From Octopus bimaculoides (Eukaryota), in assembly GCF_001194135.2 (NCBI RefSeq), contig NC_068985.1:4882254-4946253 (forward strand): a DNA stretch of 64,000 nucleotides, in the 5' to 3' direction. The position numbers were made by a program, and so were the translations under genes. Below the pieces are notes generated by a model that saw only the letters and a list, made by a program, of their open reading frames with translations, ran no database searches and was not told the origin of the DNA. Positions 975 to 62,703 of this stretch are shown here, piece after piece; position 1 is the first letter of the stretch; each line of letters opens with the position of its first letter.

Positions 975-975
<1 letters not shown>
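625..975 (-). mobile_element. tRNA-derived SINE family A (copy)
   Basis: Head ggagtggctgtgtggtaagtagcttgcttaccaaccacatggtt.. on the minus strand. Other copies at about 2545-2950, 6133-6495, 9185-9332, 16100-16470, 26185-26655, 47110-47270, 55425-55575 and 62965-63125. Confidence 0.8.
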
Positions 976-1011
<36 letters not shown>

Positions 1012-1338
1012 ATATAATTATTTGCGGGATCCGAAAGAATCAAAGTATTTTAATAATAAGGACAAGATAGAGTCAAGAACAGCATACTGATGTATCAACA
1101 GTGTGTTTGGACACTCGTACTTCCTAGAGTGTATACAGATTTGTCCTTTCAGTTACACATAACATCCACATGTACAAACCAAAGACACTCAACAAATGCT
1201 TAAAATCACACAAAGGTATACTCGGCATGCAGTCTGTGGTCCACTGTAGGCTCAAGATCCAATGCAGGGAATGTTCCCTGTGTGGTGTAGTATGAATAAT
1301 AACACAAATGGGCTGAGGTTCACTACAGCTGTTTCACA

Positions 1339-1344
1339 TTTATT
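1339..1344 (-). promoter_or_regulatory. Candidate polyadenylation signal (AATAAA) of the tandem-UBA gene
   Basis: The + strand reads TTTATT about 110 nt past the predicted stop. Confidence 0.35.
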
Positions 1345-1455
1345 ACTACATATATTCAACATCAAACTAGCCTCTCTCAATTTACTCTCCCAACTGGCAC
1401 CAGGATGAGAGAGTGACTATACATTCTATACTTTTGGGATGAAAAATCCTACATT

Positions 1456-1488
1456 TTAAATTTTGGATTTTAATTTGAATTCATTTAC
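1456..1488 (-). CDS. Tandem-UBA gene terminal coding exon (VNEFKLKSKI-stop)
   Basis: ttttccttag acceptor, phase 0, TAA at 1458-1456. AATAAA on the minus strand at 1344-1339. Confidence 0.65.
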   Translation of the reverse strand, partial: VNEFKLKSKI

Positions 1489-4400
1489 CTAAGGAAAACA
1501 TTTTTTTTTTAAATGATGTAATTGATTTGATCTTCAAAAAAAAAAACACGTCTGAAACAGTTGTAGCGAACCTCAGTCCATTTATGCTACTATTCATGTA
1601 TACACAGCCGTAGCCTACACTAGTGTCACATAACCAGCCCACTTAAAAAAGTACCTTTGGATCGTCGAGCAACATGCTGTGCCTGAGGAGACCTATTGAG
1701 CCAAGTACATCAAAATCAAAATCAAACCACAATCAAATGGAAATTATAGTTGTGGGTGATGCCAGTGCCACCTGACTGGCTCCCATGCTGGTGGCACACA
1801 ATAAGCATCATTCATGCGTAGGTCATTGCCAGTTACGCTTAATTGGCTCCCTGTAACGGTGGCATGTAAAAAGCACCATCTGAATGTGGTTGATGCCAGC
1901 CCCTTCACCCTGACTGGCTCCTGTGCCAGTGGCATGTAAAATGCACCATCTGAACGTGGGCGATGCCAGCACTGCCTGACTGACTCCCGTGCTGGTGGCA
2001 CGTAAAAAGCACTCTCTACACTCACAGAGTGGTTGGTGTTAGGAAGAGAATCCAGCTGTGGAAACATCGTCAGATCAGATTGAAGCCTGGTGCGGCCTCC
2101 TGGCATGCCAGACTTCAGTCAAACTGTCCAACCTATGCCAACATGGAAAATGGAAGTTAAACAATGATGATGATGATACATACATATATATCAATATGTG
2201 TGTTGTTTAAACATCAGAAGCTGAGGTTTATCATTTGGGTAAAAAACCCTTTCAAGGTATAAAGTGTTAAGAAACACAACATCCTTTAGAGCTATGTAAA
2301 ACAAAATCCCCCTAGAGGTGAACATGAGAGCAACAGATACATGTTTAGCCATAGTTGAAGAATGTCAGTGTAGTGCACTCGTATCCTTTCTCATGCAGAA
2401 TCAAATCTCCTAGCCTAAAGTATACACAGATTCATCTGGATTTTTACCACATGAAAAACTACAGCTTCTGGCATTTAAACAACACACATACATTAAGTAT
2501 GTTGCATTGATAATTTTTTTTTATCATATAACTGCTTCTATTTTTATCTTTTATTTGTGTCAGTCATTAGACTGCAGCCATGCTGGGGCACTGCCTTGAA
2601 GAATTTTTAGTTGAATGAAGCAACTTCAGTACCTTCTTGTAAGTCTGGTACTTATTCTATCAGTATCTTTTGCCAAACTGCTAACTTATGGGGATGAGAA
2701 CACGCCAACACCAATTGTGAAGTGGTGGTGGAGGACAAACAGACACAAACACACACACACATTAACACACATACACACACACACTAACACACACATGATG
2801 ACCTTCTCTCAGTTTCCGTCTACTAAATCCATTTGCAAGGCTTTAGTTGGCCTGAGGCTATGGTAGAAGACAATTGTCCATGATGCTAAACAGTGAGACT
2901 GAACCAGGAACTATGTGGTTGGGAAGCAAACTTCTTAATCACACCACACAGCCAAACCTAGAGTATAATTTGAATTTACATCTACTACCTCGAATTTATC
3001 TTTGTTTTTGTGTTAGAAAACAACAAACCAAAGACATCAAACAAAAAAAACTCAGTCAAGATATGCGTCAAAAGTGCTCACAGGAGAAGGAAAAGGAGAT
3101 TAACCATAAAAAATCTTAACATTACCTCTTCCATTCTTTGCACTGAATCTCTAAGTTGTTCACTTTCTTGATATAGCTTATAAACATTGTCCATAAACTC
3201 ATCCATCTTTTCCCTGAAAGTAAACATCATCACAATAATGATCATCAACAAAACATAATGGTGAAGATGATGATTTCATTTATTTGCCACAAGGGTGAAG
3301 GATGAGGGGGACAATACAAAGACAGACATAAAGTGTGGGCAGTTTATATATAATGAAATGATAAAAAAGAAAGAAAGTATACACTGAAAAAGAAGAGACA
3401 TGCATAGCATACAAAAGTTTAAAAGAGAAAAAAAAGGGGCAGGGAGGATGAGAGAGATGTGGCCCTCCTGATACAAGAAGGCCTCTAGAGATAATCGAGG
3501 AACCCCATTCTCCAAGATTTCCCTGAAATCTCAGGTGCAAGTGCCCTCACCAATTCCTTCTCTGCAACTCACAGGTCTACACTTANNNNNNNNNNGATTT
3601 CCCTGAAATCTCAGGTGCAAGTGCCCTCACCAATTCCTTCTCTGCAACTCACAGGTCTACACTTAGAGAGGTACCATCCACTCTTGCCATTTTCACAACT
3701 TTCATCCAGCTTTCAATAAATTCACTCGAGGACAGCACTTCTCTTTCCACTCTCAATTTCCTTTTCAAGTGAAACTTGAAGTAGTCAATGAGAGATCTAC
3801 CAAAGAGGAATGTATCTGTCCTCAAGCCTTTCAGCCTTGTCTACCAAACAACTCTTCTGCCACATCCTCCAGGCAAAGGAAAACTGCTTTGCCTACCCAA
3901 TTAAAGGAGGTCAGCAGTGCGATGGATCCATGTCACACGTGACAGCAGCTATTCGACATCACTCCATAAGTCAGAAATGCCCAGACACTGAACGAGGACA
4001 TGCAGAACAGTTTGGTCACTATACATGCACCTTGGACAAGCCTGTCTGACATCACATCCATGCCTGTAGAGTTTATCATGAACTGGTAGCACTCCCCAGT
4101 TGCAATGCTAGGCCAAGGAAATTATCCATGTTAGTTCCCAACCAGAAAGTCCTCTGGAAGAGACTAGCCAGTTTGTTCTCGTCAGCACCCAGAGTCTCCT
4201 CAAAAATGTCATCACGCTTCGCCTCTACTAATCCTCTATAAATTTTTAAAGTGGATCATTCACTGATCCCATTGCTTGACAGGTAGAGGACTGTGAGAGC
4301 TTGATAACATTCTAGGTGCCACAACAACAATGTATTCATATAGGAAACATCTTAACTTTCAGCACTGGCTACAAATGGTACAGAAAATCTGTAGCGATAC

Positions 4401-7400
4401 ACTTAAAAAGTGAAAATTAGTTGATGTCTTTCTATTGTGAGAACATATGAGAAGAGCAGCACAACATCTTAGAAGGAAAGAAAAAAGAAGTACAAAAGGT
4501 GATATTTATACTCAACAGCAAGTCAACAGTTCTGTATTGAAGAGATGAGGAATTATGTACATTATTTACATTTGACAGATATTTCTCTTCATCTTGTTTC
4601 TTAACACATTTCGGCTGATATACCCTCAAGCCTTCATCAGGTGTCTTGGGGAAATTTCGAACCTGCGTTCTCATTCCTAAGGCATTTTTAGATGTTATTA
4701 TTATTAGTATTCAGGTCACTGCTTGGAATCGAACTCGGAATCTTGGGGTTAGTAGCTCTTACGGGCATATGAGGTAGTGGTTTTGAGCGCAGGTTACTAA
4801 CCCCAAGATTCCGAGTTCGATTCCAGGAAGTGATCTGAGCAGCGGCGGCGACGGCGACGACGACGACAACAACAACTCGGAATCTTGGGGTTAGTAGCTC
4901 TTATGGCTTATGGGGTAGTGGTTAAGAGCACAGGCTACTAACCCCAAGATTCTGAGTTCGATTTCAGGCAGTGATCTGAGCAGCAGCAGCAACAATGACA
5001 ACAACAACGAAAACATAGAATGCAGAATCTGTGGATAAAATCAGAAAGTGATAAGTGCAGAATCTGTGGACAAAACGGTGAAACCGTATGGCATATTACC
5101 AGCCAATGTATGTCCCTAGCCCAGAAGGAATATAAGATATGCCACCACAATATGGCCAGGCTTGTCCATTGGACATTTTGCAACAAGTATGGACTTGACA
5201 GAGCAAAAACTTGGTACGACCACAAACCTGAAGGCATCGTCCAAAATAGAAATGCAAATATCCTGTGGAATTTTATGATTCAGTACGACCATGAGATTGA
5301 GAATAGGAAGCCGGACATAGTCTGAATTCAGAAAGAAAACAAACTATGCTGGATTATCGATACAGCATGCCCAACTGACAACAAGGTATGCGATAAGGAA
5401 GAAAGAAAAGTCGAGAGATATGACAAGTTAGCTTGGAAAGTTAAGCAGTTGTGGTCGATGAAAAAGTTAGCAGTAGTACCAATAATTGTCAGAGCCCTGA
5501 GAACAGTGAGCAAAAATCTCGAGAAGTACGTNNNNNNNNNNCAGAGCCCTGAGAACAGTGAGCAAAAATCTCGAGAAGTACGTGGAACAAATAGGGGCTG
5601 CAATAAGGGTGGAGCACTTGCAGAAAACAGCACTGCTTGGAACCACTCGAATACTCTGGAAGGTGCTCAAAAAATAAGGGGTGTTACCTTAGTTCACTGG
5701 TAGTGAACAGGTGACATTGTAGTACATCTCCAGCGTTAGAAACTGTGCAAAGGTAACAATAATAATAATAATAATCCTTCCTTCTAAAAGCAGGAGGTCT
5801 GAAATTTTGAAGGGAGGGATTACACTGACCCCAGAGTTCAACTGGTACTTATTTTATCAACTCTGAAAGGATGAAAGGCAAAGTCAATCTCAGCAGAATT
5901 TGAACCCAGAATATGGACAGACAAAATGAAATTCCACTAAGCATTTTGTCTAGCATGATATTGATTATGCTATCTCACTGTCTTAAGAAGAACTGCAGTT
6001 GCAGAACAAAAGACAATCAAGACACACAACTCTTAGACATAGTCTAAAAATTAGTCCAGCTTGACACATGTTGCATTTTATGCAAAACATGGTCAATTTA
6101 CTCTACACACAATACTTACATCTAACATATTCTTTTACTTGTTTCAGTCATTTGACTACAGCCATGCTAGAGCACCACCTTTAGTTGAACAAATTGATCC
6201 TAGGACTTATTCGTTGTAAACCTAGTACTTATTCTATCCGTCCCTTTTATCAAACTGCTAAGTTACAGGGATCTAAACACACCAACATTGGTTGTCAATC
6301 GATTGTGGAGAGACAAACACAGATACACAAATACATACATATACGATGGGCTTCTTTCAGTTTCCATCTACCAAATCCACTTACAAGGCTTTGGTTGGAC
6401 CGAAGCTATAGTAGAAGACACATGCCCAAGGTGCCATGCAGTGGAACTGAACCTGGAACCACATGGTTGGGAAGCAAGTTTCTTACCACACAGCAGCAGC
6501 AATGCGACAAGTAAAAATAATCTTGATTTATAACATGGACATAAGCAAGCCAATATATTTTGGGGAAAGGTGTAGTCAACTAAATTGGCTCTGGTATTTG
6601 ATTGGTGCTAATCTTATTGATCATGGAAGAATGAAAAGCAAAGCTGACCTTAGCAAGATTTGAAATAAGAACACAAAGGTCTGTAACTAAAAAGTACAAT
6701 GCTCTACTGATGCTGTCCATTTAATGCTCTAAAAGCCCTACAACAAATAAAATTTATACACACCTAATGAACACAAAGACACACTTGGTAGGGTAATAGA
6801 AACTCACATGAAATTGTTGAAATCATAAAATCATCATCGTTTAACATTTGTTTTCCATGCTGGCATGGGTTGGACAGTTTGACTGTGGACTGGCAAGCCA
6901 AGAAGCCACATCAGGCTCCAATCTGATCTGGCAATGTTTCTACAGCTGGATACCCTTTCCTAACGCCTACCACTCTGAGAGTGTAGTGGGTGCTTTTTAT
7001 GTGCCACTGGCTTGGGGACTAGTCAGGCGGCACTGGCACTGGCCACGTTTGGATGGTACTTTTTATGTGCTACCGGCACAGGAGCCAGTCGGGGTGGGGG
7101 CATTGGCATCGACCATGTTCGGATGGTGCTTTTCACATGTCACTGGCACAGGGAGCCAGTCAGATAGCACTAGCAACAACAATAATGGTTTCAAACTTTG
7201 GCACAAGACCAGCAATTTTGGGGAGCCAGTCAGGTGGCACTGGCAACAATAACAATAATGGTTTCAGACTTTGGCACAAGATCGGCAATTCTGGGGAGGG
7301 GATTAGTCAATTACATCAATCCCCACTGCACAACTGGTACTTATTTTATCAACTCCAATGGAATTTGAAATCAGAACATAAAGACAGGCGATATATCATT

Positions 7401-10400
7401 AAGCTTGCTAATGATTCTACCAGCACATTGCCTTTTAAATACTGATCCCAATTTTGGCACAAAGCCAGCAATTTTGGAAGCGGGAATAAGTCAATTACAT
7501 TAACCCCAGTGTTCAACTAGTACTTATTTTATTGACCCTGAATGGATGAAAGGCAAAGTTGACCCTGGTGTTGTTTGAACTCAAAACTTGGCCGGAATTG
7601 TACTTTATTGAATTCTGCTGTTTTGAACTGTCTTCCTTCTTTCTTGTCTTCTTTGTTTTGTTTTTTTTCTTCAAACTCTTTTTGAACTTGTGTTTGACTT
7701 TTTTTGGACTTAAAAACATGGCAAAGAAAAGTGATAAGGTGTTGGAGTGGGAAATTGACCCACCCAAACAGGATAAAAAGTCTTGAGAAGAGGACAGTGG
7801 TACTGCGGAAGTACTTCAAGTTGCTCGATACCATCGCCCTCTTCAAAAAGATTGATATAGAGAGAGAGTTGGCGGAATACATGCCAACTATAAAACTTAT
7901 TTCCAGAGGTGTCAAATATGTGACGGTGTGGTTGCTATTTGACACCCCTGAAGAGACTCGCAATTTTGTGAGTCAGCCCTTAGTGGGCAAAGAGATATTG
8001 TTTCTTCCCAAGTATTGTGGGAAGAAGTTGACAATGGCTTGGGTCTATGGGTTGTCACCCGGGATAGAACCGAGTGGATAGAAAACACTATTCACCGGGG
8101 TCTGGGTGGCAGCGGAGCCGAGCTTCTCAGTGTAAAAATTTTGTCTGCGTTTGATTGGGTGAGGTCAAAAGCGGTTTTGACCCTGTGGACCCAATCAGCC
8201 AAGAATCTGGTGTTTCTAGATTTTCTGAGAATGGCCGGTTGTAGGTATCTGGTGATTCTTGAGGGACGCCCCCCCCCACCACTAGTGTCACCTGTGCCTG
8301 GAACCAGGCCACATTAAAAAGAACTGTCCCCAGGGAGAGATGGAGGCAGTGGAGACCTCCCCAGAAAAAAAGGAAGAAGGGGGACAACAATGGTTGCCCA
8401 CCGAAGGACCCCAAGGCTGCGGGAAGGAGGGAAGATCCTCCAGTTAAAGCAGAGGAACTACACCCTCCCATAACAAAGGGGAGAAAAAAGAAGAAAAACA
8501 GGGCAGTGCCGGCATGTTCCGAAGCCCTGTCGGTGGGAATTGTGCCACTGATGGTGGAAGTTGTGACCTTGACCCATGTGGAGGAGGAATTTTTGATCTT
8601 CTTCCACAGGGGAGAGGCAGTGGGAAAGTTTACTAAAAAGTTTGCCAGGGGAGGAGATATAACCTGCATTAAAGATCCTGGATGGCCTCCGCAGGTAGCT
8701 GTCATCTCAGACACGGATTTTTTCAAGGTAATAAACTCCTTCCCAGAAGATGTATTCCGCTTCCGATTAAAGCGCCCTGAACTGGCACTATCGGAGTGCT
8801 TAAGTGACACTTTGAGCTTGGATGGGTGCTGGCGGGGCGGAAAATAGTAAAAATTAAGAGGCTGAGTGCCTCATACTGAAAGGGCATGTGGCCCATAAGA
8901 GAAAATGTAAGAGGCCTGGTGTCTCATTTGTAAGGACATTGTGTTATTTTTGGTAAGAAGCTTAGTGCCTCATTGTATGGACCTTGTGTCCAATGAAACA
9001 TTAGTAAGAGGTTTATTACCTCAAATTGTGTGTTTTGTAAAAGAACAATGTTTTAGAGAAGCAGCGATCGGCGGGTGTCATCTGCCTTCCCTCATTAATA
9101 CCATTTTGTTCATTCATCTCTTTAATGTTATTGTCCAGCCCGCAGCTACTACTTCTACGTAATGCCTTGATAGCAAATTGAATGAAATAAAGAAGCTTAC
9201 TTCCCAACCACATGGTTCCAAGTTCAGTCCCACTACACATCACCTTAGGCAAGTGTCTTCTACTTTAGCCTTGAGCCAACCAAAGCCTTGTGAGTGGATT
9301 TGGTAGACTGAAACTGAAAAGAAGCTTGTCGTNNNNNNNNNNNNNNNNNNNNNNNNNNNNNNNNNNNNNNNNNNNNNNNNNNNNNNNNNNNNNNNNNNNN
9401 NNNNNNNNNNNNNNNNNNNNNNNNNNNNNNNNNNNNNNNNNNNNNNNNNNNNNNNNNNNNNNNNNNNNNNNNNNNNNNNNNNNNNNNNNNNNNNNNNNNN
9501 NNNNNNNNNNNNNNNNNNNNNNNNNNNNNNNNNNNNNNNNNNNNNNNNNNNNNNNNNNNNNNNNNNNNNNNNNNNNNNNNNNNTACCAAAATAAATAATC
9601 TTCTCTACTCTAGGTACAAGGCCTGAAATTTTTGGGGAGAGGGGAGCAGTCGATTAGATCGACTTCAGTATGCAACTGGTACTTAATTATCAACCCCAAA
9701 AGGATGAAAGGCAAAGTCAACCTCGGCGGAATTTGAACTCAGAATGTAAAGACAGATGAAATACTGCTAAGCATTTCGCCCAGCGTGCTAAAGATTCTGC
9801 CAGCCTGCCACCTTACCAAAATAAATAATAAATACATACCTGAACTCAAAATGATACACTCCATATTTTCTGTAGGCAACATAGAGATCACTTAAATAAA
9901 GAGCAACCTGGAAAGATAACAATATCAAATAATCTTTTGATACGTGTTTGTAAAGATTGATCAGTCTATAAACTTCATCTTTTATGATGTTTTTTACACT
10001 ACACTTAAACTTGTAATCATTTACAGATGCTCAATTTTTACATATATATGATATGATGGCAACCGTGCATACAGTTTAGCTCCAAGTTGGCTCTGATAGA
10101 TCAAACCGTTGATAAAAGATGTTCCAGCCTTGAGCAGCCCAAATTTTGTTTCAGTTCAAGATACACTTTGTTGGAGAATTGTAAAAAAAAACCCACAAAA
10201 ACAAACAAGTTAATCATGGGTAGAATGTCATTTTACAAGAGTTTTACTTAGTGACTGACACCAGTGCCGTCTCACTGGCATCTGTGCCAGTAGCACATAA
10301 AAAGTACCATTCAAGCATTGGGCCTCATGGAGGCAGTGACAGGTGACCAAACGTCTTGGTAATATACTGTGCTTGTGTTGACTTGTCAAGCCAAGTGAGA

Positions 10401-13390
10401 CCATAGTCATGTCTGATGCCAGTGTCAGGTCAATGGCACCCATGCCGGTGACACGTAAAAAGCACCCACTACACTCTCAGAGTGGTTGATGTTAGGAAGG
10501 GCATCCAGTCATAGAAACCTTGCCAAATTAGATTGGAACTTGGTGCAGACCCCTGGCTTACCAGTTTTCATTTAAACCAACCAACCCATGCCAGCATGGA
10601 AAGCGGACATTAAACAATGATGATGATGATGATGAAGGCTAACTTGGAGCTAAATAGTTATACTTCTTGCCAACTAAATGCCAGAGTCCTAGTTACTTTG
10701 GCTGGTATCAATCAAGCTAGTTGTCACTCAGTTCTATTATCACCTAGCTGGCTGTCAACTGATTGCCACTGCCATGTGTACATATATTTTGGTTAGGCTT
10801 GAAATAGGGATATTTAATTCTAACACGAAGTTAATTTCAGGATTGGTTTATCTTCTTTCACTTGGTTCTTTCTTGCATATATCCCTATATTTCAATGAAG
10901 CAAAGTATTATTTATCCCAGGCAAAAACAATGGGCCAGGTACTTGTGATATTAATGTTTTTCTCAGTTAACTAAACATGAATTACCTAAGATTAGAAGTA
11001 CCCTTCTACAGGTCAATACCAAAGTGTATGAAACAGTATTGATTGTGTTGATGGCTGATTCAGTCTACATCTTCTGTCTGAGAAGACCTGTCAAACCAAG
11101 TGAGATCATAGTTGAGGCTGACGCCGGTGTTTTGTAACTGGTACCCATGCCAGTGGCATGAAAAAGGCACTCACTACACTCTTGGAGTAGTTGACATTAG
11201 TAACGATATCCAGCCATAGAAAACATGTCAAATCAGACTGGAACTTGGTGCAGCTCCCCAGCTTACCAGTTTTCAGTCATTTAATACCAACTCATACCAA
11301 CATGGAAAACGGACATTAAATGATGATGATCATCATCATGATCATCCAAAAATAAAATAAGAAAATGATCACTTTATAATTTTCATAGCATTAATAATAT
11401 GTTTAATCAAACATACGATGAAATTCCATTCTGCTTTCTTCAGAACATATACTGTTTCACCATTTGTATAAGGATATCTTTCTCGTAACACATAAAACAG
11501 ATCAAGTTGTGATTCTGGTTCACTAGAAGAAAAACATATACATATATATATATATATATATAAATGTGTATAACATAATATCTATATAAATATACTAAGT
11601 TGCTTTATCCTTGTCGGTTAAAAGGATTCTTTAACAAAAATCACTTTAACCTATTTAGTACCAACAAATGTGAGACTGTCCCTGACCCTACAACCAAAAT
11701 TTAATGCTATTTCATGTCCCAAAGACCAGCTTAACAAGAATAAAGATATTTTCCTGAATTTTTCAATAATTTCAAAATTAATTGTAGCAAAGGATGAATA
11801 TCTCAACAGAAATATGGTAACAAAAGCATGAAACTTACTACTCTACTGACCCATGGGACTACATTTTGAATCTTGTTACATGCACTGTACTATGCATTGC
11901 TGCTAAAAGTATGTACAGGATTTTCGAAATAAGTTGTCTCCTATCAGATAAATGACCTCATTTGACATTTCATTCAATGTGAATTTTCACAACATACATA
12001 CATTGAAGGTTCGTGGCTTAGTGGTTAGGGCACTCAGCTAACAATCGTAAAGTTGTGAGTTCAATTTCTGGCAGCACATTGTGTCCTTGAGCAAAACACT
12101 ATATTTTGTGGCACTCTCTTCCATTCAGCTAGCAAATATGATTTGTACTTGTAATTCAAAGGGCTAGCCTTGTTACATTCTATGTCAAGCTGAATCTCCC
12201 ACAGAACTAAGCTAAGTGTATATGTGTCTGTGGAGTACTCAGCTACTTGCGTGTTAATTTCACGAGCAAGCTGTTTCATTGATTGAATCAACTGGAAGAC
12301 TTATTGTTATAACAGACGGAGAGCCAGACAGATATGAATCACTTTAGTATAATACTTATAATACAGTATAATAACTTATAATGCATTGAAAGGAAATAAG
12401 TGAAGCAGAAATGTGTATTTTACTTACGGTCCAGTATCCTCATAGTATCTGCATACAATTTGGTCATCAACAATATCAATATACTGAGATGGATATTTTT
12501 TCATCTTCCCAGCTGCATTAGAAATCTCAACATTATCTGATTCAGCAATGTTTTGAGCAACCTTCAATACACAGAAAGGGAAATAGATAAGATATCAAAT
12601 TTATGTAACTATAATAGTATAATATATAACTATAATCTAGTACAGGTGCATAAACACACCTGTGCCAGTGGCAGGTAAAAAGCATCCAACACACTCTAAG
12701 TGGTTGGCATTAGGAAGGGTATCGAGCCGTAAAAACCAAGCCACAACAAACAATTGGAGTTTGGACAGTTCCCAGCTGGCCAGATTCATGTCAAACCATC
12801 CAATCCATGCCAGCATAGAAAATGGAAATGATGATGATGACGATGATATAGACAAGGTCTAAATAATGGTCATTACATATTTTTCCTTTATTGGGGTAAA
12901 TGTGGCTTACAACTGTTTCCTGTAGTCATAGGTTCGTTACTGATAGGTTTATTCAAATGATCAATGATCAGTTGAGAAAAGTTGAATGACCTTAAAAATT
13001 AATGCTATTTTCTGTCAGAGCCATTTCTGATAGAATGGTACATGCATGAGGGGTGGAGAGAAGAGAGGGAGCAAGTGGAAGAGAGATAAGAGGAAAGGGG
13101 AAGGCAAGTGATGATTTGGAAGGGAAGGACTAAGGTGAAGAGAAGGAAAGAAGAGAGGAAGGGATAGAAAGAGTAGGGGAGAGGAGGCATTCAATAGAAG
13201 AAGGGGGATAAGATAGCTGAAATTGAGGAAAGGACAGTCACAAAACATAAAGTGTCTGTAGTTGGGTCATCATACAAGAACATGCTTGCATTGTTTTTAG
13301 GTTAGATATTCTCCAAATATTGTTGCATTTCAGGAAAGTCATTTTATTTATTATTATTATTTTATTTTTGCCAAATAAACACACGAACTA

Positions 13391-13435
<45 letters not shown>

Positions 13436-16400
13436 CTTCACTTGTTTATTATTGTTATTTTATTATTTTTATTATTTTGATGCCTGTATGTTGTCCAGAA
13501 ATCTTTCATTACACATCTATGGCTGCTTTAACGAATGAAAATAGATAAGGCATAAAATTTATGTAACTATAATAGTAAAAAAAAAATCATAATAAATAAA
13601 ATGACCATCCCAAAGTACAGCAATATCTGTTTCAACACATGATTTCACATCAGTTATCTTGCAAAATGAATTGATATTCTCCAAATGTTGAGATGAAATC
13701 TGATATGAGCTATTTACACACATGGTCAACTTAAATCTTTAATATTTAGTCATTTGTACTATCATGCATAATGAGGGAATTGTATTAGTAAATGAATTAA
13801 ATATCCGCAGTAACCATATTGTGAGGGGGAGGTTGAGAAAGCTTTGGTGAGCTTGGATATACATTAAAGATAAAGGGAGAAATGTGAGGTGAAAATAAAG
13901 ATAAAATAAAGTTAAGCTATTTAAAATCGAATAGAATTGGAGGTCAGATATAATTTCAAATTAACCTGAATTAAAGAAATTTTAAAATTTAAACAATTAA
14001 AGCTATTATGGATAAAAAAATTAAATTAAAATTTATAAAATTAACATTAAAACAAAGAACTAAAAGAATTTTACAAAATAAAAGGTAATACTAAAACAAT
14101 AACAATAATAATAATTGTTTCTACTGTAGGCACAAGGCCTGAAATTTGTGGGGAGGGGACTAATCGATTACATCGATCCCAGTACTCAACTGGTACTTGA
14201 TTTATCAACCCCAAAAGGATGAAAGGTAAAGTCGACCTAAGCAGAATTTGAACTCAGAACGAACAACAACAAAGTAACTCAATAAAATAAAATAAAAATT
14301 AAGAAATTTAAAAAGTTGTAAAATTTAAAGAAATAAAAAACATCTACCCATACACATATAAAAAATTAGATAACTTACATTTAACCTTTAGACATTATAC
14401 CCATCCCAACCAGTGTCTCTTGCTTTAGTATTAAAGTTATCTAGGGAACCTACTGAAGGATTTATTATAGGAAAGCTTACAGCATACCACTACTTCTTGC
14501 CTATGATTAATACGGTTACTCTCAGAGACATGTAATAATTATTCAAGGAGGGATACTCAGCTAGCTACTCATCAAACCAAGGATACTTTAATATGAAGGC
14601 TACATAAATCTATCTGGGTTCATTCATAGCCTAAAACCTAACTCGGTTGTATACAGTATAAATGCCAAACTGTATAGCAGTTATAACAACAAATGCAATC
14701 TTTGCAATGCAGAAGTCTTATCTATTATATAATGCAGCAATTGCATTAATAAAACAAAATGACCTTATTCTTAATTGTAAACATTAGGTTATGCCACACA
14801 TTTTTAAGGTACAAATGATAGTGTCCTCCACAATAATTCCCTGTGAATTTATAACACATTTTTTAACTATCTTTTAACATATTTCCATGACTTTGTGGTC
14901 TCTTTATATTTTCCTCTTAGCATACTGGGGTGTGCATGCATATACAAATGCACCCTCTGTGCACACATATATATTTATGTTGATACAACGGGTGCGAAGT
15001 GAGTGTACATATGTATGTATGTGTGCATGACTGTATAAATCTACTGTGAAATTAGAAAACAACCAACTTTACCAGTGCCTACCCTACATCATTATCTTTA
15101 CCCATCCTTACCTTATATTCCTAACAACCATTATTTCCCCTTAAAGATTACTCTCTACGCTTATCTCCTCCTCTTCTCGTCTTTTTTCCTAACTCCACCT
15201 GATTCCCACCACTCTTAAATATTCAACCTCTTACTTTTTCCTTGACAATTACATTTCTTCCAACATTTAAAAATTTTTTATTCTGTGTACATGTGTGTGC
15301 ATGGGTACACCAATGTATTTGTTTGCTGCTGACATAATAAAGTGGCCCCAGTTTAATATAAATAACAACTTTCTCTCTCCTTAAAGTCAGCAGCCATCTA
15401 ATCTATATGAGGAAAAATCTCATATATACTTTTACTCAGTTAGGCCTCAAAATTACTGTAACCACTAATCTATCTGAAGTTGATTTTTTAGATAATTCCC
15501 TAGAGTGAAACTTGTTCTCTTATAAGCTCTATCATAAAGTAATTGAGAAACTCATGTATATCCATAAACAGTCATGTCACCCCACTTAGCATTTAAAAAC
15601 ATTACAGCCAACATCAGTAACAGGATGTCTATTTTCTCCTTTTCTAAAGAAATATTTGTAAAGCAACCCCATAATATAATATCCTGGCTAACAATGGCTT
15701 CAAAGATAAGATGCCTTACAACCATTCAATTAAAAATATGAAACATAAAATACACCCAGGAATATAATATGGTTCTCCCCACACACCCACAAACTTTCTC
15801 TTTGAATGTTATGACTAATGTAGGTAAAAAAAATTCCTTACTTTAATAGACAGGCATTTCCTAGTAAACAATAAATACAAGAAAATTAAATTTTTAATAG
15901 ACATTCAGAGAAAAATTCCTTTACATGCTTTCCCAGTATGAAAAACATATCACTTGCAGGTCACACCAAGAATTCAAGAGACTCTGAAGCTTGCCCACTC
16001 AATCACACATGCTTGACCAACTCAGTGGTTTATGAAGCCAAAGTCACTGTAGTGCTCCAAAGTAAGGAATTCCAAAAGAAAAATTACTTTTTTTTTTAAC
16101 TTGCTTCAGCCAGCTGACTTTGGCCATGCTGGAGCACTGCCTTGAAGAATTTTAGTCAAATGAATTGACTCCAGGAATTATTTTTTCAAACCTGGTACTT
16201 ATTCTATTGGTCCTTTTTTTTTGCCAATCTGCTAATTGACATGAACATAAACACACCAACATTGGTTGTCAAGTGGTGGTGGACAAGCACAAACACAAAC
16301 ACACATATATATGATGGGCTTCTTTCAGTTTCCATCTATCAAATCTACTCATAAGGCTTTTGTTGGCCCGAGGCTATAGTAGAAGACACTTGCCCTAGGT

Positions 16401-19400
16401 GCAATGCAGTGTGAGTGAACCTGGAACCAAGTGATTGGGAAGCAAACTTTTTACCACACAACCATGCTGGTTTATGAAAAACAAATTTCAAAAAAAGATA
16501 CACAAGCAACTGGTTTCCTTTTCAGCACATATGTAAGAATAAAGCTACAAAGTTAACTAGTCATATATGGGAACTGAAGGTCAACCACACACCAAACACC
16601 ACACACAATCAAGTGGAGCATGATGGTGTGATCAATTTTTTTTGTAAATGGATCAAAGAGATGCAGGCTTTGTGTAGCTGAAAATCTCATATTCTTTTTA
16701 GATCCAACAACTCCATGAACCTAGTAAATTCCAGCTCCAACATAATTAGTAACTGTAAACACATGGCCAAATTTCTCATTGAACTGGAAGATTCTATCCT
16801 CTTTGGATAAAACATGCAGTCTCACAGACATCAGCTTCCTCCTTATTGACATAGTTTACATATGCTGTATTAATTCTGATTCAAACACCATCCACATTAA
16901 TTCTGATTTCAACAGACAAAGGGGATCCATTAGTCTTGCCAGAGATGTGTGAAACCTCTCTGATGCTGGTGACATTATAAAATATACCTAGCACACTCTA
17001 TAAAGAGGTTGTCATAAGGAAGGACATCCAAACCAAAAATTGAAATTTCAAGTGTGACATAGGCCCCTGGATCCACTAGGAGTGGTGAACCATCCAATCC
17101 ATGCCAGTATAAAACAATGAAAATAAAGACCTTGATCCTTGTACTTAATCTGGTACCTATTTTATCAATCTCTATTTATCTGAAGGCTAAGTCCCACAAC
17201 AAATTGAGTTACAATCATTTAGGAACAAAAATGCTGCAAAGTATTGGTACTGATTTACACCGGATCACTCGTGCACACACATGCATGCACACACATGCAT
17301 GCACATACACACACACAACAGACTTCCACATAGGTTCCATTTCTTAAATTTCACTCACAAATCATTGTTCAACTGAAGACCCACGGTGCAAGCTACTGGC
17401 CCAAAGTGTGACTGGGTGGAATTGAACCCAGAATACATCTGTGAAAAGGACTTTTTAACCACACAGCCATACTTTCCATCATTATTTTTCATTATACAAT
17501 TCACTTCGATTCAGAATATATAATCAGCATGGTAAATATCAACAGTACCTGTAAATTCCAATTGCATTTATCCAAAAAGAACTTAGCTTTGCCCACATCC
17601 AGTCTTGGAACCTTTCTAATTAACTGGTCCATTTTTGTTTCCTTGTCATCCCTGTAATTAATTTTTAAAAAAATCAAATAACATTATTTGTAGTTTAATT
17701 TTTTTAACACAGGAAAATTATACAAACGTTTTCTGAAAAATTAACTTTGACACATGAACATTCTATTTCAAGAGAGATTTCTTTTTATATCAAACATAGT
17801 ATGAAAACCAATAAAAGAAAATTTGTCAGTATTCCAAAATATATCTATGTTTAACCCTTTAATATTTAAACCAGCCATATTTGGCCCAAATATTCTGTTT
17901 TATGTTCAAACCAGCCAGATCTGGCCTCTCACACCTACCCAACAACGTCAGTCTAAGGTTAAACAATTACATCATTGAAATCTTGAAGCTTTTGAGATAA
18001 TGCATGATTCATTCAAAACAACAGAGATAAATAAGGATTACATTTAACAGTAATCTGAATGGTAAAGGGTTAAACCATAGTTTTTTACTTATTTAGCAAG
18101 ACTATATCATTGCTATTATGCAAAAGTGTTGTAAGTCCAAAACATTGCTTTTTCAGAAAATGAAAAAATGGTTTCACCATTCCATAGCAATCTGAAGCAG
18201 CTGGAGATATGATACTTTGACCAAAAGAACTAGCTATTGCAAGCAAAAATAAATATTGAAAAAAATGCATTTGGTCAAACTTGGACATATGACAGTTTAA
18301 CATAATAGCAACAATATGTTCTTCAGAATAATAAATTTTAAGCAAATGTGGTGCAAATGGATGAGGACAGCTGTGTGAAAAAGTACCACACCCTAGCAGT
18401 TGAAGGAATCTGTGGAAGAGGTAGACCCTTTTTCTGTCTTTCTGTCTCTGTCACACTTAAACCTTTTAGCACCTGATACAAGATCACCTCCTCTAATTAC
18501 TCCTTCCCTCCCCAAAATTTTTTGTCTTGCAAGTTACTTGGTGATCCTGCTAGTGATGGTGTCCTGTAAAAAGCATCCAGTCCACACTGTAAAGTGGTTG
18601 GCATTTGGAAAAGTATCCAGCTGTAAAAACAATGCCATAAAGCTGAACTCACCTGTGCTGATGCCACATAAAAAGCACACAGTCCACTATGTGGGGTGGT
18701 TGATGTTAGAAAGGGCATCCAGCCTTAAAAACCAGCCAAAACACACACAGAAGTTTAGTGTAGTCTTCTGCCAGGCCAGCTCCTATTAAACCATCCAATC
18801 CATTCAAGGTAGACATTAAACAATGATGATGCTGGTGATGTTAGTATTTATAAAAGACCAACACAGTTAAAACACTATGTGCAATAAAATCTGCTAAATG
18901 TTTGCAGATGTTCAGTTATTTCTTCATGCAACCCAAAGAATATATTTTCATTCAGCAATTTAACCAGTCATTTACTTCATACCAGCCAACAACAACAACA
19001 ACAGCCCACAAGTCCATTTAATACTGCCATAATATAATTCCTAGCTTCTTCACAATACTGCTTTGTATCACTGCCTTCATTTCCCCTTCTCCACATAGCT
19101 AACCACTGAAATATTTAATCACACTATATTCTTTTTCATTTCCCACCCCCCACTATGAAGTTCAGTTTGTTTACTTGCTCCATTGTGTGTTTTGATATAT
19201 CACAATCCATTGAAGCTGTGACGGTCGGAGGTGAATACTGTATCTTATTTTTAATGTTTTTGATTGTAAGGTATAACAAATATTACTATTTCTTAAGTAA
19301 GAAGCTATGATGGTAAACTTGTCACTTATAACTTAATTATAAATATTTATCACCATGCATAACTCTTAATTCAGGCTGCGTAAATGTTATGATGAATTAT

Positions 19401-20632
19401 ACATACCAAGACACAGAACGTGTGTTTAATGTGTGCATGTATGTTGAAGATGTGGATTCATATTCTTTTTACCGTTACATAAAAAAATACACAGTTTCAT
19501 AAATACAGAAATAAATTTAACAAGTTGAAAGAACATGAAGTAAAGGAAAATAATTTCTACATTAGTTTATTTATGTACATTTGGCATAGTACAATTGGAA
19601 AGTAAGGTCATTTTGTCGTAGAGAATTACAACTTAAAATTCACACTAACTAATCTTTCATACTAACTACTAGAGTTCACAACAATTCAATCTTGTTGGAT
19701 TTGAGTATTGAACATGGCATAAAGATTAGCCGATACTCAAAAGGGTGAGTGTCGTGGATTTGAGTGACAATCAACGATCACTGGAGAATTTCCCAAAAAT
19801 CAGGGTTTTTATAACTGCTCATACAGGAATTCTAAGAACTGTACTTTGTGAAAGATTTCTTTAATGAAAGTTCAGAATTCGTATACGGGCAGTAATTTTT
19901 AACCAATGAGAAATCAACAATTTCTCCTGTTCGGGCAAACGAACCTATGTTCTCTCTCCGCCTCTAATGAGTTTGCTACAAAGCTATGGGGACCTCCAGT
20001 TTTTCTTTTCATGAGTGATTACTAGCCCATTCTAATATCTCATTGAAACATTCAGAAAATAATACTCACCCTTCATCTCCTTCTTTTAAAAGGATTATTT
20101 CATTATCACCTTCAACAGACACACACTCACCAGGCATAAGAATGTGTTTCTCAGACTCTGCAGATGTATGCTTGACTATTCTCAAATGTCTGGACAAAGT
20201 CTACAAAACAATATGCATTACACAAGTTAAACAGGATAATCCAAGAAAATTGATGATTGCCTGCTTCTGCATATAGCAAATATAAAATGTTCAATAAAAA
20301 TAATCATTAGGCTAATAATGTCGTGTATAAAGCACTTATGCTGGTTTCATGAATAAAGCATCCATACTGATGCCATGTTAAAAGCATCCATGTTAGTGTC
20401 ATGTAAAAAGCACTGGTGATGGTGCCACATAAAAAGCACTGGTGCTGGTGCCACATAAAAAGCACCAGGTCCACTGTAAAGTGGTTGGCATTAGGAAGAG
20501 CATCCAGCCACAGAAACCATGCCAAAACAGATAATTGGAGCCTGGTACAGCATTCTGGCTGGTCAGCTCCTCTCAGACTATCCAACCCATGCCAGCATGG
20601 AAAACAGATGCTAAATGATGATGACAACAACA

Positions 20633-20664
<32 letters not shown>

Positions 20665-22148
20665 AATGAAGCTAATGATTTTGTTCTCTTCACTATGGGT
20701 TTAACTTCCATTTATTACAATTTCTTGACTCACTGGCCCTCGTGCCTGTGGCACGTAAAATCACCCACTACACTCTCAGAGTGGTTGGCATTAGGAAGGG
20801 CATCCAGCTGTAGAAACTCTGCCAGATCAGATTGGAGCCTGGTGCACCCACCTGGCTCGCCAGTCCTCAGTCAAATCATCCAACCCATGCCAGTATGAAA
20901 AGCAGATGTTAAATGATGATGATGAGGAGGATGAATTAAAACTATATTATGTTAGTATCCACTTTACTATTTGCTTTCCATTTAGCAGGAGTCCCTAGCC
21001 ATTTTCTCCTCAATCATTATTTCAAGTTGTCATTCCAACCAGTATCTATTCATTATAACTCTATATTCAGTCATTTTAGCTCTAGAAATACTAAGAATAC
21101 TTTGCTAAAGAGGTCTGATAATGCTGAAACCTGTCCATAGTTTCAATAGTGTTTACCTCTCACTCCATTCTAATCTTAATTCATTAAATTCTGGAGTTAC
21201 TTATCCTACTTTTCTTAACCAAATTTAATCATCAAGCACATGATTTTTTTTTTTTTGTTTGTTCTCATTAAGTTTGTAATTTCAGTCAATTAAAATCTCT
21301 TCTCTTACTGCTTGAAGCATGTTAGCAGCAACCTTACTATTCATATAACTTAGTTTGCCATGAAGAAGAGAAAATATAAAGCATTTCTAAGGTTTTTCAG
21401 TAGATGCCTCATATATCAGATATCTCCTCTTCATGACAACTTAATTTATATCACGTTGCGCATGGCTTAGTGGTTAGGATGTTGGATTCATGATCATAAG
21501 ATTGCGATTTCAATTCCTGGACCAGGCGACATGTTGCATTCTTGAGAATAACATTTCATTTCACGTTGCTCCAGTCCATTCAGTTGGCAAGAATGAGTAA
21601 TCCTACAACAGACCAGCACTGTGCCCACTGAATCGCCAATTTCAATTTCATCATTCTGAGAAGAATAAAACAAATACAACTAATACATGTTATATATATA
21701 TATATGCGTGGCCGTTGCCAGTACTGCCTGACTGGCCTTCATGCGGGTGACATGTAAAAGCACCCACTACACTCTCTGAGTGGTTGGCGTTAGGAAGGGC
21801 ATCCAGCTGTAGAAACTCTGCCAAATCAGATTGGAGCCTGGTGTTGCCATCCGGTTTCAGTCCTCAGTTAAATCATCCAACCCATGCTAGCATGGAAAGC
21901 AGACGTTAAACGATGATGATGATGATGATGCAATCAGTGTCATTGACTCAGTTCATCCAAGCCTGCTCAATAAATAATCTTTATTACAATGTTAGCTATT
22001 GCTTATTGTCTATTAAGAATTTCATGCCTTAATTCTTTTGTAAGTTTATTACTGTTTTTCTATAATAACATAAAAATGTAACACATATAACTAACATAAG
22101 AAATATAACTAAATAAAAAGCTACCTACCAAGTCTTTTGCATTTTCAT
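1456..22148 (-). CDS. Uncharacterised 183-aa protein with two tandem p47-type UBA-like domains and a C-terminal helical/coiled-coil region (7 coding exons)
   Basis: Hand-built model complement(join(1456..1488,3126..3213,9840..9907,11417..11522,12428..12561,17549..17651,22129..22148)). All introns are GT-AG and the phases 2,0,2,0,2,0 chain without stops. Translation: MKMQKTWDDKETKMDQLIRKVPRLDVGKAKFFLDKCNWNLQVAQNIAESDNVEISNAAGKMKKYPSQYIDIVDDQIVCRYYEDTGPEPESQLDLFYVLRERYPYTNGETVYVLKKAEWNFIVALYLSDLYVAYRKYGVYHFEFREKMDEFMDNVYKLYQESEQLRDSVQRMEEVNEFKLKSKI*. The start and final exons are the least certain. Confidence 0.8.
3126..3213 (-). CDS. Tandem-UBA gene exon (EKMDEFMDNVYKLYQESEQLRDSVQRMEE), amphipathic helix/coiled coil
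   Basis: 88 nt, tttactttcag acceptor, gtaatg donor, phase 2 to 0. Confidence 0.8.
3660..4330 (-). mobile_element. Decayed Tx1/L1-clade LINE, ORF2 C-terminus
   Basis: The minus strand reads ACPRCMYSDQTVLHVLVQCLGISDLW (CCHC motif typical of the ORF2 C-terminus), with stops. Confidence 0.6.
4560..4760 (-). mobile_element. SINE-like element with tRNA-like head and hammerhead-containing tail (copy 1, rearranged)
   Basis: Same sequence family as 35960-36200 and 58885-59150. Confidence 0.7.
5008..5775 (+). mobile_element. 5'-truncated R4/Dong-clade non-LTR retrotransposon (CCHC plus restriction-like endonuclease), ending in (TAA)n
   Basis: CRICGQNGETVWHITSQC zinc knuckle, HHN motif, RKPDIV...IIDTACP RLE core, in-frame stop, and a 3' end running into a TAA microsatellite. 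Confidence 0.85.
7590..9170 (+). mobile_element. Decayed gag/ORF1-like element (Tx1/L1-type ORF1) with no ORF2 following
   Basis: Three to four overlapping frames cover 7704-8847. CX2CX4HX4C knuckle CHLCLEPGHIKKNCP at 8286-8330 preceded by EGRP. GC-richer than the flanks. Confidence 0.65.
9840..9907 (-). CDS. Tandem-UBA gene exon (VALYLSDLYVAYRKYGVYHFEF-R)
   Basis: 68 nt, tatctttccag acceptor, gtatgt donor, phase 0 to 2. Begins VA like the exon after repeat 1. Confidence 0.8.
11417..11522 (-). CDS. Tandem-UBA gene exon: UBA-like repeat 2 (EPESQLDLFYVLRERYPYTNGETVYVLKKAEWNFI)
   Basis: 106 nt, tttttcttctag acceptor, gtatgt donor, phase 2 to 0. Ends W-N-F-I, like W-N-L-Q in repeat 1. Confidence 0.82.
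12005..12320 (+). mobile_element. tRNA-derived SINE family D (copy)
   Basis: A box gtggcttagtggttagg, B box gagttcaattt, then gtgtccttgagcaa. Related copies at about 21455-21620, 23300-23560, 47280-47590 and 54570-54870. Confidence 0.7.
12428..12561 (-). CDS. Tandem-UBA gene exon (VAQNIAESDN...RYYEDTG-P)
   Basis: 134 nt, open frame, pyrimidine tract plus gaag acceptor, gtaagt donor, phase 0 to 2. Confidence 0.85.
15480..16720 (+). mobile_element. Decayed Penelope-like element (Neptune-type RT C-terminus and GIY-YIG), split by a SINE at about 16100-16470
   Basis: Fragments translate as MYIHKQSCHP, NIIWFSP..FSLNVMTNVGKK, CPLNHTCLTNSVVYEAKV and KATKLTSHIWELK. Confidence 0.7.
17549..17651 (-). 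CDS. Tandem-UBA gene exon: UBA-like repeat 1 (DDKETKMDQLIRKVPRLDVGKAKFFLDKCNWNLQ)
   Basis: 103 nt, ttacag acceptor, gtactg donor, phase 2 to 0. KAKFFLDKCNWNLQ parallels p47 RAKFFLESSSWDLE. Confidence 0.88.
17865..18068. mobile_element. piggyBac-type MITE
   Basis: ttaa-ccctt...aaggg-ttaa. Related copies lie near 53645-53880, 55090-55300, 57740-58030 and 58545-58730. Confidence 0.6.
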
Positions 22149-22185
22149 CTTGAACAAGTTCACTATTGAACTGCTTAGTAGCAGC
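22129..22185 (-). CDS. Tandem-UBA gene, first coding exon (57 nt, ATG at 22148: MKMQKT-W)
   Basis: Acceptor ttttctttttccacag and donor gtaggt. Ends in phase 2 (TG|G = Trp), matching the next exon. Confidence 0.6.

Positions 22186-48658: not shown

Positions 48659-62703
<14,045 letters not shown>

What the first reader, a model, noticed from the sequence alone, without database searches (positions are those of the whole stretch)
1456..22185. Unrecognised spliced gene encoding a UBA-only, p47-derived protein, head-to-head with p47 itself
Seen in sequence: seven small exons invisible to the ORF track splice in frame into a 183-aa protein. Anchored on the Trp, repeat 1 (DVGKAKFFLDKCNWNLQ|VA) and the p47 exon 1 of this same window ([17 protein letters not shown]|LA) share 9 of 19 residues plus several conservative changes, and the phase-0 intron falls at the same codon. 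Established: p47 binds ubiquitin via its UBA domain and p97 via SEP/SHP/UBX. Inference: an inverted partial duplication of the p47 5' end created a lineage-specific gene with two UBA-like modules and a helical tail but no p97-binding UBX. It could be a stand-alone ubiquitin reader or a decoy/regulator of p97-p47, for example in Golgi or nuclear-envelope reassembly.
Basis: partly seen in the sequence, partly recalled or inferred. Interest (0 to 1): 0.82.

Follow-up and report, generated by a model that had tools for sequence, protein, structure and literature searches.

The report
Start of a giant octopus UBA-repeat gene
The supposed 183-residue gene is really the first eight coding exons of a large, already annotated but unstudied octopus gene, whose start carries three copies of the ubiquitin-binding module of the neighbouring p47 gene.

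Summary
The seven segments exist and splice in frame to exactly 183 aa. The similarity to p47 exon 1, the shared intron position and the head-to-head layout are real and beyond chance.

The gene model is wrong at both ends. A search of 1.84 billion proteins found XP_036358878.1, "uncharacterized protein LOC115212235" of Octopus sinensis (1935 aa). Its first 264 residues match eight minus-strand exons of the window without a gap, at 85% identity.

- An exon at 20200-20070 was missed.
The orthologue continues for about 1670 residues, and the gene leaves the window on the left.

Five of seven exons and four of six junctions are right. All three N gaps lie in one intron. The O. sinensis protein has a fourth UBA-like module, 31 tandem 32-residue repeats and an Ala/Glu/Lys-rich tail, but no SEP, SHP or UBX. 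Argonauta hians has an orthologue with the same exon boundaries (dN/dS about 0.5). This is a real, fast-evolving gene seen only in octopods, not a stand-alone UBA-only protein. Interest is modest.

The parts
24433..24537 (-). Coding exon 1 (module A, first half): MGFNKALLVKRFSIDNWIDYGRAKYYLEKNNWKID|gtaagt. An AG acceptor sits 16 nt before the ATG.
   Evidence: It matches residues 1-35 of XP_036358878.1. It is also present in the related-species contigs L001-L003 and in Argonauta.
22129..22185 (-). Coding exon 2 (module A, third helix): AATKQFNSELVQDENAKDL.
20070..20200 (-). It is 131 nt long and restores the frame between exons 2 and 4.
   Evidence: It is 95% identical to the O. sinensis protein.
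17549..17651 (-).
   Evidence: Argonauta has the same boundaries.
12428..12561 (-).
11417..11522 (-).
   Evidence: Its likeness to a UBA is only marginal: E 0.047 for the window copy and 2e-4 for the O. sinensis copy.
9840..9907 (-).
3126..3213 (-). This is the last exon inside the window. The orthologue continues with DSTFDRDR..., which is not found at 1-3125.
1456..1488 (-). It has a good acceptor but no counterpart in the orthologue, so it is probably not part of the main transcript.
48659..48763 (+). p47 (NSFL1C) coding exon 1: [35 protein letters not shown]|gt. It is the presumed source of the modules.
57526..57668 (+). p47 coding exon 2: [14 protein letters not shown]... Exons 3 (60187-60277) and 4 (62645-62704) follow. 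The rest of p47 lies beyond the right edge of the window.
24538..24702 (-). Conserved non-coding block directly upstream of the start codon. It is 94-97% identical to the related-species contigs, against 85-88% in the flanks. It may be the 3' end of a 5'-UTR intron, or a promoter with 5' UTR.

Best explanation
The finding is the 5' end (eight coding exons, 264 aa, 24537 down to 3126 on the minus strand) of this octopus's orthologue of Octopus sinensis LOC115212235. The gene continues past the left edge of the window.

The N-terminus holds three UBA-like modules, A, B and C. Each is split by a phase-0 intron three residues after the conserved Trp, exactly as the p47 UBA is split between its exons 1 and 2 some 24 kb away on the other strand.

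Most likely history (inferred): an inverted duplication of the first two p47 exons, then tandem duplication of that two-exon unit, then fusion to unrelated sequence. This happened before Octopus and Argonauta diverged.

In O. sinensis the full protein has a fourth module, 31 tandem 32-residue helical repeats, an unassigned region and a roughly 290-residue Ala/Glu/Lys-rich tail.

Most likely mode of action (inferred, not shown): the module array binds ubiquitin or a ubiquitin-like partner with avidity, and the long helical repeat region acts as a scaffold. It lacks SEP, SHP and UBX, so it would not dock on p97 the way p47 does.
For: - A phmmer search of 1.84 billion representative proteins found P0105 at E 9e-108. 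P0105 is XP_036358878.1.
- The window model aligns to its residues 1-264 without a gap, 224/264 identical, exon by exon.
- All eight exons have canonical AG/GT borders.
- The Argonauta hians orthologue GAB1598819.1 keeps the same exon ends at A1 and B1 and an acceptor 16-17 nt before the ATG.
- Window against Argonauta over 186 codons: pS 0.59, pN 0.40, Fisher p 4e-4. In the 13-codon core VGKAKFFLDKCNW all four differences are synonymous.
- UBA homology: Pfam UBA_4 33.3 bits against a cut-off of 21.8, and UBA_8 27.2 against 26; hhalign to a p47 UBA set gives 96%, E 1.8e-9; the p47-only profile hits are listed.
- The octopus's own p47 is the best-scoring family for the module profile. In the PDB profile search p47 was the only UBA-X adaptor family returned, ranking second (E 0.12) behind the yeast Ede1 UBA (E 0.004, a 15-residue match).
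- With a 3-sequence alignment, AlphaFold2 gives three helices for module B (pLDDT 66-78) and for module C (63-72).
- The orthologue has no UBX or SEP and no SHP, VIM or VBM pattern.
- That the p47 UBA binds ubiquitin, and that SEP adaptors are defined by SEP plus SHP plus UBX, is taken from PMC9941556.
Against: - No RNA evidence was available for this species.
- No DNA of the O. sinensis locus could be read. Its gene range is 310 kb, which is long enough to make a merged model possible.
- The 32-residue repeats were found neither in the window nor within 10 kb downstream of the Argonauta gene.
- Exon A1 shows 8 nonsynonymous to 2 synonymous changes against a close relative and is no better conserved than its flanks. 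O. sinensis has lost the Trp of module A.
- Single modules fall below Pfam's cut-off: B 20.7 bits, A 16.9 bits, C nothing.
- The fold search gave no significant match.
- Ubiquitin binding is pure inference.
Confidence: 0.85

Rival explanations
1. One reading: a short protein of about 183 aa with only UBA-like modules, ending at the TAA at 1458-1456.
For: The chain is in frame and every border is canonical, including a good acceptor before 1488. Alternative terminal exons are common, and no RNA data were available here.
Against: If the true first two exons are joined straight to 17651, without the exon at 20200-20070, the reading frame stops after one codon. The upstream ATG in exon 24537-24433 would be used first.
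Confidence: 0.06
2. The 1935-aa O. sinensis model merges two genes. The true product would be a medium-sized multi-UBA protein (at least about 380 aa, four modules), separate from a downstream repeat-protein gene.
For: The gene range is 310 kb. Argonauta is annotated as a 277-aa partial model followed by a separate model. The 32-residue repeat shows no relation to the UBA modules (hhalign probability 0.3%) and is not seen close downstream in Argonauta.
Against: Module D (residues 332-363) is followed only about 20 residues later by the first 32-residue repeat (384-410) in one continuous model.
Confidence: 0.15
3. The exons are a decaying relic in this species, that is, a pseudogene or non-functional duplicate of p47 exons.
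For: Exon A1 shows 8 nonsynonymous to 2 synonymous changes against a close relative and is no better conserved than its flanks. Identity to O. sinensis is only 85%, and 67% in exon 8.
Against: All eight exons are open, have canonical borders and are collinear with the orthologue without a single indel. The reading frame and exon borders are kept in Argonauta, where synonymous sites are near saturation and pN is below pS (p 4e-4).
Confidence: 0.03
4. The modules come from another UBA-like family (DCN1, TDP2, FAF1/2 or UBXN7), not from p47, and lie next to p47 by coincidence.
For: Module A alone scores nearly as well against human DCUN1D1 (Smith-Waterman 59) as against octopus p47 (65). The best PDB hit of the module profile is the yeast Ede1 UBA (E 0.004), ahead of p47 (E 0.12). 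These domains are short.
Against: The module profile scores octopus p47 at 28 bits and human p47 at 15-16 bits, against 5-10 bits for the other families. The RAKFFLE/AKFFLD motif and the intron position are shared with the p47 gene 24 kb away. No other UBA-X family appears in the PDB search at E up to 10.
Confidence: 0.1

Closest known systems
Octopus sinensis LOC115212235 (XP_036358878.1, UniRef100_A0A7E6EU62), 'uncharacterized protein', 1935 aa
   Same: Residues 1-264 are collinear with the eight window exons: 85% identical, no gaps, and the same order of modules A, B and C.
   Different: It is from a different species. In it the Trp of module A is replaced by Tyr. Residues 265-1935 (module D, 31 repeats of 32 residues, Ala/Glu/Lys-rich tail) cannot be checked here because the gene leaves the window.
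Argonauta hians GAB1598819.1, hypothetical protein (partial, 277 aa), locus L004
   Same: It has modules A and B, the exon 3 homologue and the exon 6 homologue in the same order. It has the same exon ends at W+3 and the same acceptor before the ATG. The core VGKAKFFLDKCNW is identical.
   Different: It is only 36-37% identical overall. It has extra duplicated 17-residue mini-exons after module A, and module C has lost the Trp. No p47 exon lies within 10 kb upstream, but the distance in the window is 24 kb, so synteny remains untested.
p47 / NSFL1C, the SEP-domain p97 adaptor
   Same: The N-terminal UBA-like domain is homologous, with the same phase-0 intron three residues after the Trp. The p47 gene itself is the divergent neighbour.
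   Different: p47 has one UBA followed by SEP, SHP boxes and UBX, which bind p97 (PMC9941556). The orthologue of the new gene has none of these. It has three to four UBA-like modules instead, plus an unrelated repeat array.
Proteins with several UBA domains in a row, such as UBAP1 with its SOUBA domain (PDB 4AE4)
   Same: Several UBA-type three-helix modules lie close together, which in known cases raises avidity for ubiquitin. This resemblance is a lead from general knowledge. 4AE4 appears only as a weak fold match (E 2.5).
   Different: There is no detectable sequence relation. Here the modules are separated by linkers and predicted beta hairpins rather than overlapping.

Membership tests
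UBA-like domain (Pfam UBA_4 PF14555 / UBA_8 PF22566) | Profile score at or above Pfam's gathering score | tested here: met
   The corrected 264-aa model scores UBA_4 33.3 bits (cut-off 21.8) and UBA_8 27.2 bits (cut-off 26), with two stretches each. Taken singly the modules are below the cut-off: B 20.7, A 16.9, C no hit.
UBA-like domain (Pfam UBA_4 PF14555 / UBA_8 PF22566) | Compact three-helix bundle | tested here: inconclusive
   AlphaFold2 with a 3-sequence alignment gives three helices at 101-139 (pLDDT 66-78) and at 182-227 (63-72), and a partial result for module A. The single-sequence run was useless (pLDDT 35). Foldseek against the PDB gave no match at E below 0.37, although UBA domains are frequent among the weak matches.
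UBA-like domain (Pfam UBA_4 PF14555 / UBA_8 PF22566) | Binding of ubiquitin or a ubiquitin-like protein | not testable with these tools
   This needs pull-down or NMR titration with recombinant modules.
p47 / SEP-domain p97 adaptors (NSFL1C, UBXN2A/B) | SEP domain | tested here: not met
   There is no SEP hit in the 264-aa window model or in the 1935-aa orthologue.
p47 / SEP-domain p97 adaptors (NSFL1C, UBXN2A/B) | C-terminal UBX domain and SHP box (the p97 N-domain binding module) | tested here: not met
   There is no UBX hit in the orthologue and no F.G.G..[LIVM] pattern. The downstream part of this species' own gene is off the window, so the test rests on the orthologue.
p47 / SEP-domain p97 adaptors (NSFL1C, UBXN2A/B) | N-terminal p47-type UBA with the exon 1/2 boundary three residues after the Trp | tested here: met
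   Modules A, B and C all have a phase-0 intron at W+3, as does p47 in the same window. hhalign gives 96%.
Orthologues of O. sinensis LOC115212235 | Collinear N-terminus with the same exon content | tested here: met
   224/264 identical with no gaps, and eight exons in order.
Orthologues of O. sinensis LOC115212235 | Module D, the array of 32-residue repeats and the Ala/Glu/Lys-rich C-terminus | not testable with these tools
   The next exon (DSTFDRDR...) is not in window 1-3125, the repeat profile finds nothing in the window, and the gene runs off the window.
   The orthologue uses another frame for 22185-22129. It has an upstream ATG exon and an intervening exon, and it continues after ...RMEE. 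This rests on orthology only. RNA evidence was not available.

The most novel reading that the evidence does not exclude
Octopods built a new giant ubiquitin-reading scaffold by copying the first two exons of p47 next door, multiplying them, and fusing them to a novel 32-residue repeat array. The new gene would still be co-regulated with p47 from the shared divergent intergenic region. It would compete with, or hand over, ubiquitinated p47 clients without engaging p97.
Probability: 0.1. Interest if true: 0.55.

Novelty: new variant of a known kind. Interest (0 to 1): 0.3.

Why it matters
The practical value is a correction: a gene model that was wrong at both ends, with coordinates that can be checked against RNA-seq.

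In biological terms it is a tidy case of gene birth by exon duplication. The UBA-coding exon pair of a housekeeping p97 adaptor was copied in inverted orientation, multiplied, and joined to unrelated repeats. The result is a fast-evolving gene that this search found only in octopods.

If the modules still bind ubiquitin, the protein would be a p97-independent multivalent ubiquitin reader sitting next to its parent gene. Nothing here bears on a long-standing open question, and the gene is already present, though unnamed, in public annotation.

Tried and rejected
1. Direct in-frame joining of exon 22185-22129 to an alternative acceptor at 17641, which gave a 227-aa A-B-C model. The orthologue's exon at 20200-20070 replaces this idea. 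The model still served as the query that found the orthologue.
2. The 32-residue repeats of the orthologue as degenerate UBA helices. Rejected: hhalign probability 0.3% against both the p47 UBA set and the modules.
3. A duplication unit of 'UBA plus beta hairpin'. Rejected: the post-module segments are not similar (z 0.4 or lower).
4. Exon A1 as a neutral pseudo-exon, suggested by its 8:2 substitution pattern. Rejected for the gene as a whole by the orthologue and by the Argonauta comparison. The pattern itself stays unexplained.
5. The search for homologous proteins gave no hit for exons B/C and only a genomic read-through ORF for exon A1. This silence is uninformative, because the window's own p47 N-terminus also found no cephalopod protein (best 46% identity).
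6. Single-sequence AlphaFold2 gave pLDDT 35. Foldseek against the PDB gave nothing significant. phmmer of the model and of P0105 against the PDB gave nothing.
7. P0107 and P0108 from the representative search are unrelated repeat or coiled-coil proteins.
8. Rfam found no RNA family in the window.
9. Pfam found nothing in six long ORFs that look like transposon remnants.
10. Literature searches for the SRA run, for LOC115212235, and for cephalopod plus NSFL1C found nothing relevant.
11. Nucleotide-level search between the p47 exon 1 region and the left 26 kb found only interspersed repeats. The exon cores are 48-50% identical, so the duplication is old.
Full report
WHAT IS IN THE SEQUENCE

Both quoted peptides are present. 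[17 protein letters not shown] is on the + strand at 48713-48763 and DVGKAKFFLDKCNWNLQ is on the minus strand at 17599-17549. The minus-strand segments are 22148-22129 (in an exon starting at 22185), 17651-17549, 12561-12428, 11522-11417, 9907-9840, 3213-3126 and 1488-1456. Together they give 552 nt, that is 183 aa plus a stop. The three N runs named by the scan's program all fall in the intron between 9840 and 3213.

The + strand carries the first four coding exons of p47:
- 48659-48763
- 57526-57668
- 60187-60277
- 62645-62704

Pfam scores this p47 N-terminus at 49 bits for UBA_4. The rest of p47 lies beyond the right edge of the window.

IS THE p47 LIKENESS MORE THAN CHANCE?

Yes. In-window tblastn of the exon at 17.6 kb against p47 exon 1 gives E 3e-5.

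It lies on the minus strand at 24537-24433 and reads MGFNKALLVKRFSIDNWIDYGRAKYYLEKNNWKID|gtaagt. It has its own ATG and a donor at the same codon position.

I built a profile only from non-cephalopod p47 UBA domains and ran it against all 1991 open six-frame segments of the window. It hits p47 exon 1 (4.6e-14), the 24.5-kb exon (9.9e-7) and the 17.6-kb exon (5.2e-5), with nothing else below 0.3.

The exon at 22185-22129 is the natural continuation of the 24.5-kb exon when read as AATKQFNSELVQDENAKDL.

WHAT IT IS

For the 24.5-kb exon it found only a genomic read-through ORF from a related species. That silence means little, because the window's own p47 N-terminus found no cephalopod protein there either (best 46% identity).

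The exhaustive HMMER search of 1.84 billion representative proteins, using a provisional 227-aa A-B-C model, settled the matter. The top hit, at E 9e-108, is a 1935-aa protein. It is XP_036358878.1, 'uncharacterized protein LOC115212235' of Octopus sinensis. The second hit is a 277-aa partial hypothetical protein of Argonauta hians.

The O. sinensis protein starts MGFNKALVVKRF... and contains, in this order, the counterparts of:
- the 24.5-kb exon
- the 22.2-kb exon in the AAT... frame
- an exon TLSRHLRIVKHTS...EGDEG, which I then located at 20200-20070

After ...RMEE it continues with DSTFDRDRIAQ... for about 1670 more residues.

The corrected window model has eight exons (24537-24433, 22185-22129, 20200-20070, 17651-17549, 12561-12428, 11522-11417, 9907-9840, 3213-3126), all with canonical borders. 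It gives 264 aa that align to the orthologue without a gap, 224/264 identical. The next exon is not in 1-3125, so the gene leaves the window on the left.

The first exon is in the wrong frame, one internal exon and the true first coding exon are missing, and the stop exon 1488-1456 is unsupported. If the true first two exons are joined directly to 17651, the frame stops after one codon.

IS THE GENE REAL AND UNDER SELECTION?

Argonauta keeps the same architecture. Exon A1 has an ATG and ends three residues after the Trp. An AG acceptor lies 16-17 nt before the ATG. Exon B1 has the same borders.

Over 186 aligned codons between the window and Argonauta, pS is 0.59 and pN is 0.40 (dS about 1.15, dN about 0.57; Fisher p 4e-4). 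In the 13-codon core VGKAKFFLDKCNW all four differences are synonymous. The gene is therefore maintained, but it evolves fast.

One oddity remains. Against the closely related Logan contigs, exon A1 has 8 nonsynonymous and 2 synonymous changes and is no better conserved than its flanks (95/105 against 738/842). The 165 nt upstream of the ATG are better conserved, at 94-97%. O. sinensis has also replaced the Trp of module A with Tyr.

DOMAIN CONTENT

The 264-aa model passes Pfam's cut-offs for UBA_4 (33.3 bits) and UBA_8 (27.2 bits). Single modules do not. An alignment of modules A, B and D from three species matches a p47 UBA alignment with hhalign probability 96%, E 1.8e-9.

The module profile scores the families as follows (the human sequences were recalled from memory, so this is a lead rather than a database result):
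- octopus p47: 28 bits
- human p47: 15-16 bits
- TDP2, FAF1, FAF2, DCUN1D1 and UBXN7: 5-10 bits

In the PDB profile search the only UBA-X family hit is p47 (1V92, E 0.12). It ranks behind a short match to the Ede1 UBA (E 0.004).

Module C is marginal by sequence: E 0.047 for the window copy and 2e-4 for the O. sinensis copy, and z 3.3 against module B. It does share the intron position and the 'VA' start of the following exon.

AlphaFold2 with a three-sequence alignment gives three helices for module B (pLDDT 66-78) and for module C (63-72). The rest is of low confidence. The fold search was not significant.

The full O. sinensis protein has:
- a fourth module at 332-363
- 31 tandem repeats of about 32 residues at 384-1438, with consensus roughly e-AK-LA-kyF----eY--F-kev; these are not detectably related to UBA
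- an unassigned region at about 1440-1650
- an Ala/Glu/Lys-rich tail of about 290 residues

It has no SEP or UBX domain and no SHP, VIM or VBM pattern.

HOW IT MOST LIKELY AROSE AND WORKS

Shown:
- three modules, each split by a phase-0 intron at W+3 like the p47 UBA
- the p47 gene is the divergent neighbour, with 24.1 kb between the ATGs
- no nucleotide similarity is left between the copies, and the exon cores are 48-50% identical
- modules A and B are present in both Octopus and Argonauta

Inferred: an inverted duplication of p47 exons 1-2, then tandem duplication of that unit and fusion to other sequence, all before the two octopod lineages split.

Function is inferred only. The p47 UBA binds ubiquitin, and p47 docks on p97 through its SHP box and UBX domain (PMC9941556). 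A protein with three or four such modules and none of the p97-binding parts would most plausibly be a multivalent reader of ubiquitin or a related modifier, mounted on a long helical scaffold. I put this at about 40-50% given that the gene is real. The modules may equally have drifted to another protein-protein role.

RIVALS

- A merged O. sinensis model: about 15%. The 310-kb gene range and the absence of repeats near the Argonauta gene keep this open.
- A pseudogene: about 3%.
- Origin from another UBA family: about 10%.

NOVELTY AND VERDICT

The gene is already modelled, unnamed, in two public annotations. No paper mentions it. Relatives were found only in octopods, with the caveat that fast evolution may hide older ones. 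It is a new architectural variant among UBA-like domain proteins and a clean case of exon-duplication gene birth next to the parent gene. It is not the stand-alone p47-derived decoy that was proposed. Interest is 0.3.

Noticed in passing
window 24538-24702 (minus strand): The roughly 165 nt just upstream of the start codon are 94-97% identical to the related-species contigs, against 85-88% in the surrounding DNA. An AG acceptor 16-17 nt before the ATG is kept in the window, in L001-L003 and in Argonauta. An unlocated non-coding 5' exon probably lies further towards p47.
   Followed up: partly
window 24433-24537 compared with L001:642-746: Exon A1 differs from a close relative by 8 nonsynonymous and 2 synonymous changes and is no better conserved than its flanks. 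O. sinensis has Tyr in place of the module's Trp. This points to relaxed constraint or positive selection on module A within Octopus.
   Followed up: partly
window 48129-48548, with copies at 23068-23244, 9650-9797, 7435-7562, 14103-14261 and 5818-5911: An interspersed repeat family sits directly upstream of p47 exon 1 and has several copies inside the introns of the new gene.
   Followed up: no
L004:12900-17800 (Argonauta hians): The Argonauta orthologue has several duplicated 17-residue mini-exons (KAAEALQKDIDHKKRDL and KAAEAKLEGIGDKNEDL) between module A and the exon 3 homologue. The window has none.
   Followed up: no
P0105 residues 384-1438 (O. sinensis protein, not in the window): There are 31 tandem repeats of about 32 residues with no Pfam family and no detectable relation to UBA, followed by an Ala/Glu/Lys-rich tail of about 290 residues.
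   Followed up: partly
window model residues 79-93 (20134-20090) and 158-171 (12486-12445): AlphaFold2 predicts a beta hairpin after module A and another after module B. Confidence is low, and the two segments are not significantly similar to each other.
   Followed up: partly
window 24813-25355 (+), 42288-42569 (+), 7704-8081 (+), 8127-8810 (-): These are long ORFs that look like transposon remnants. Pfam finds no family in any of them at E up to 0.01.
   Followed up: partly
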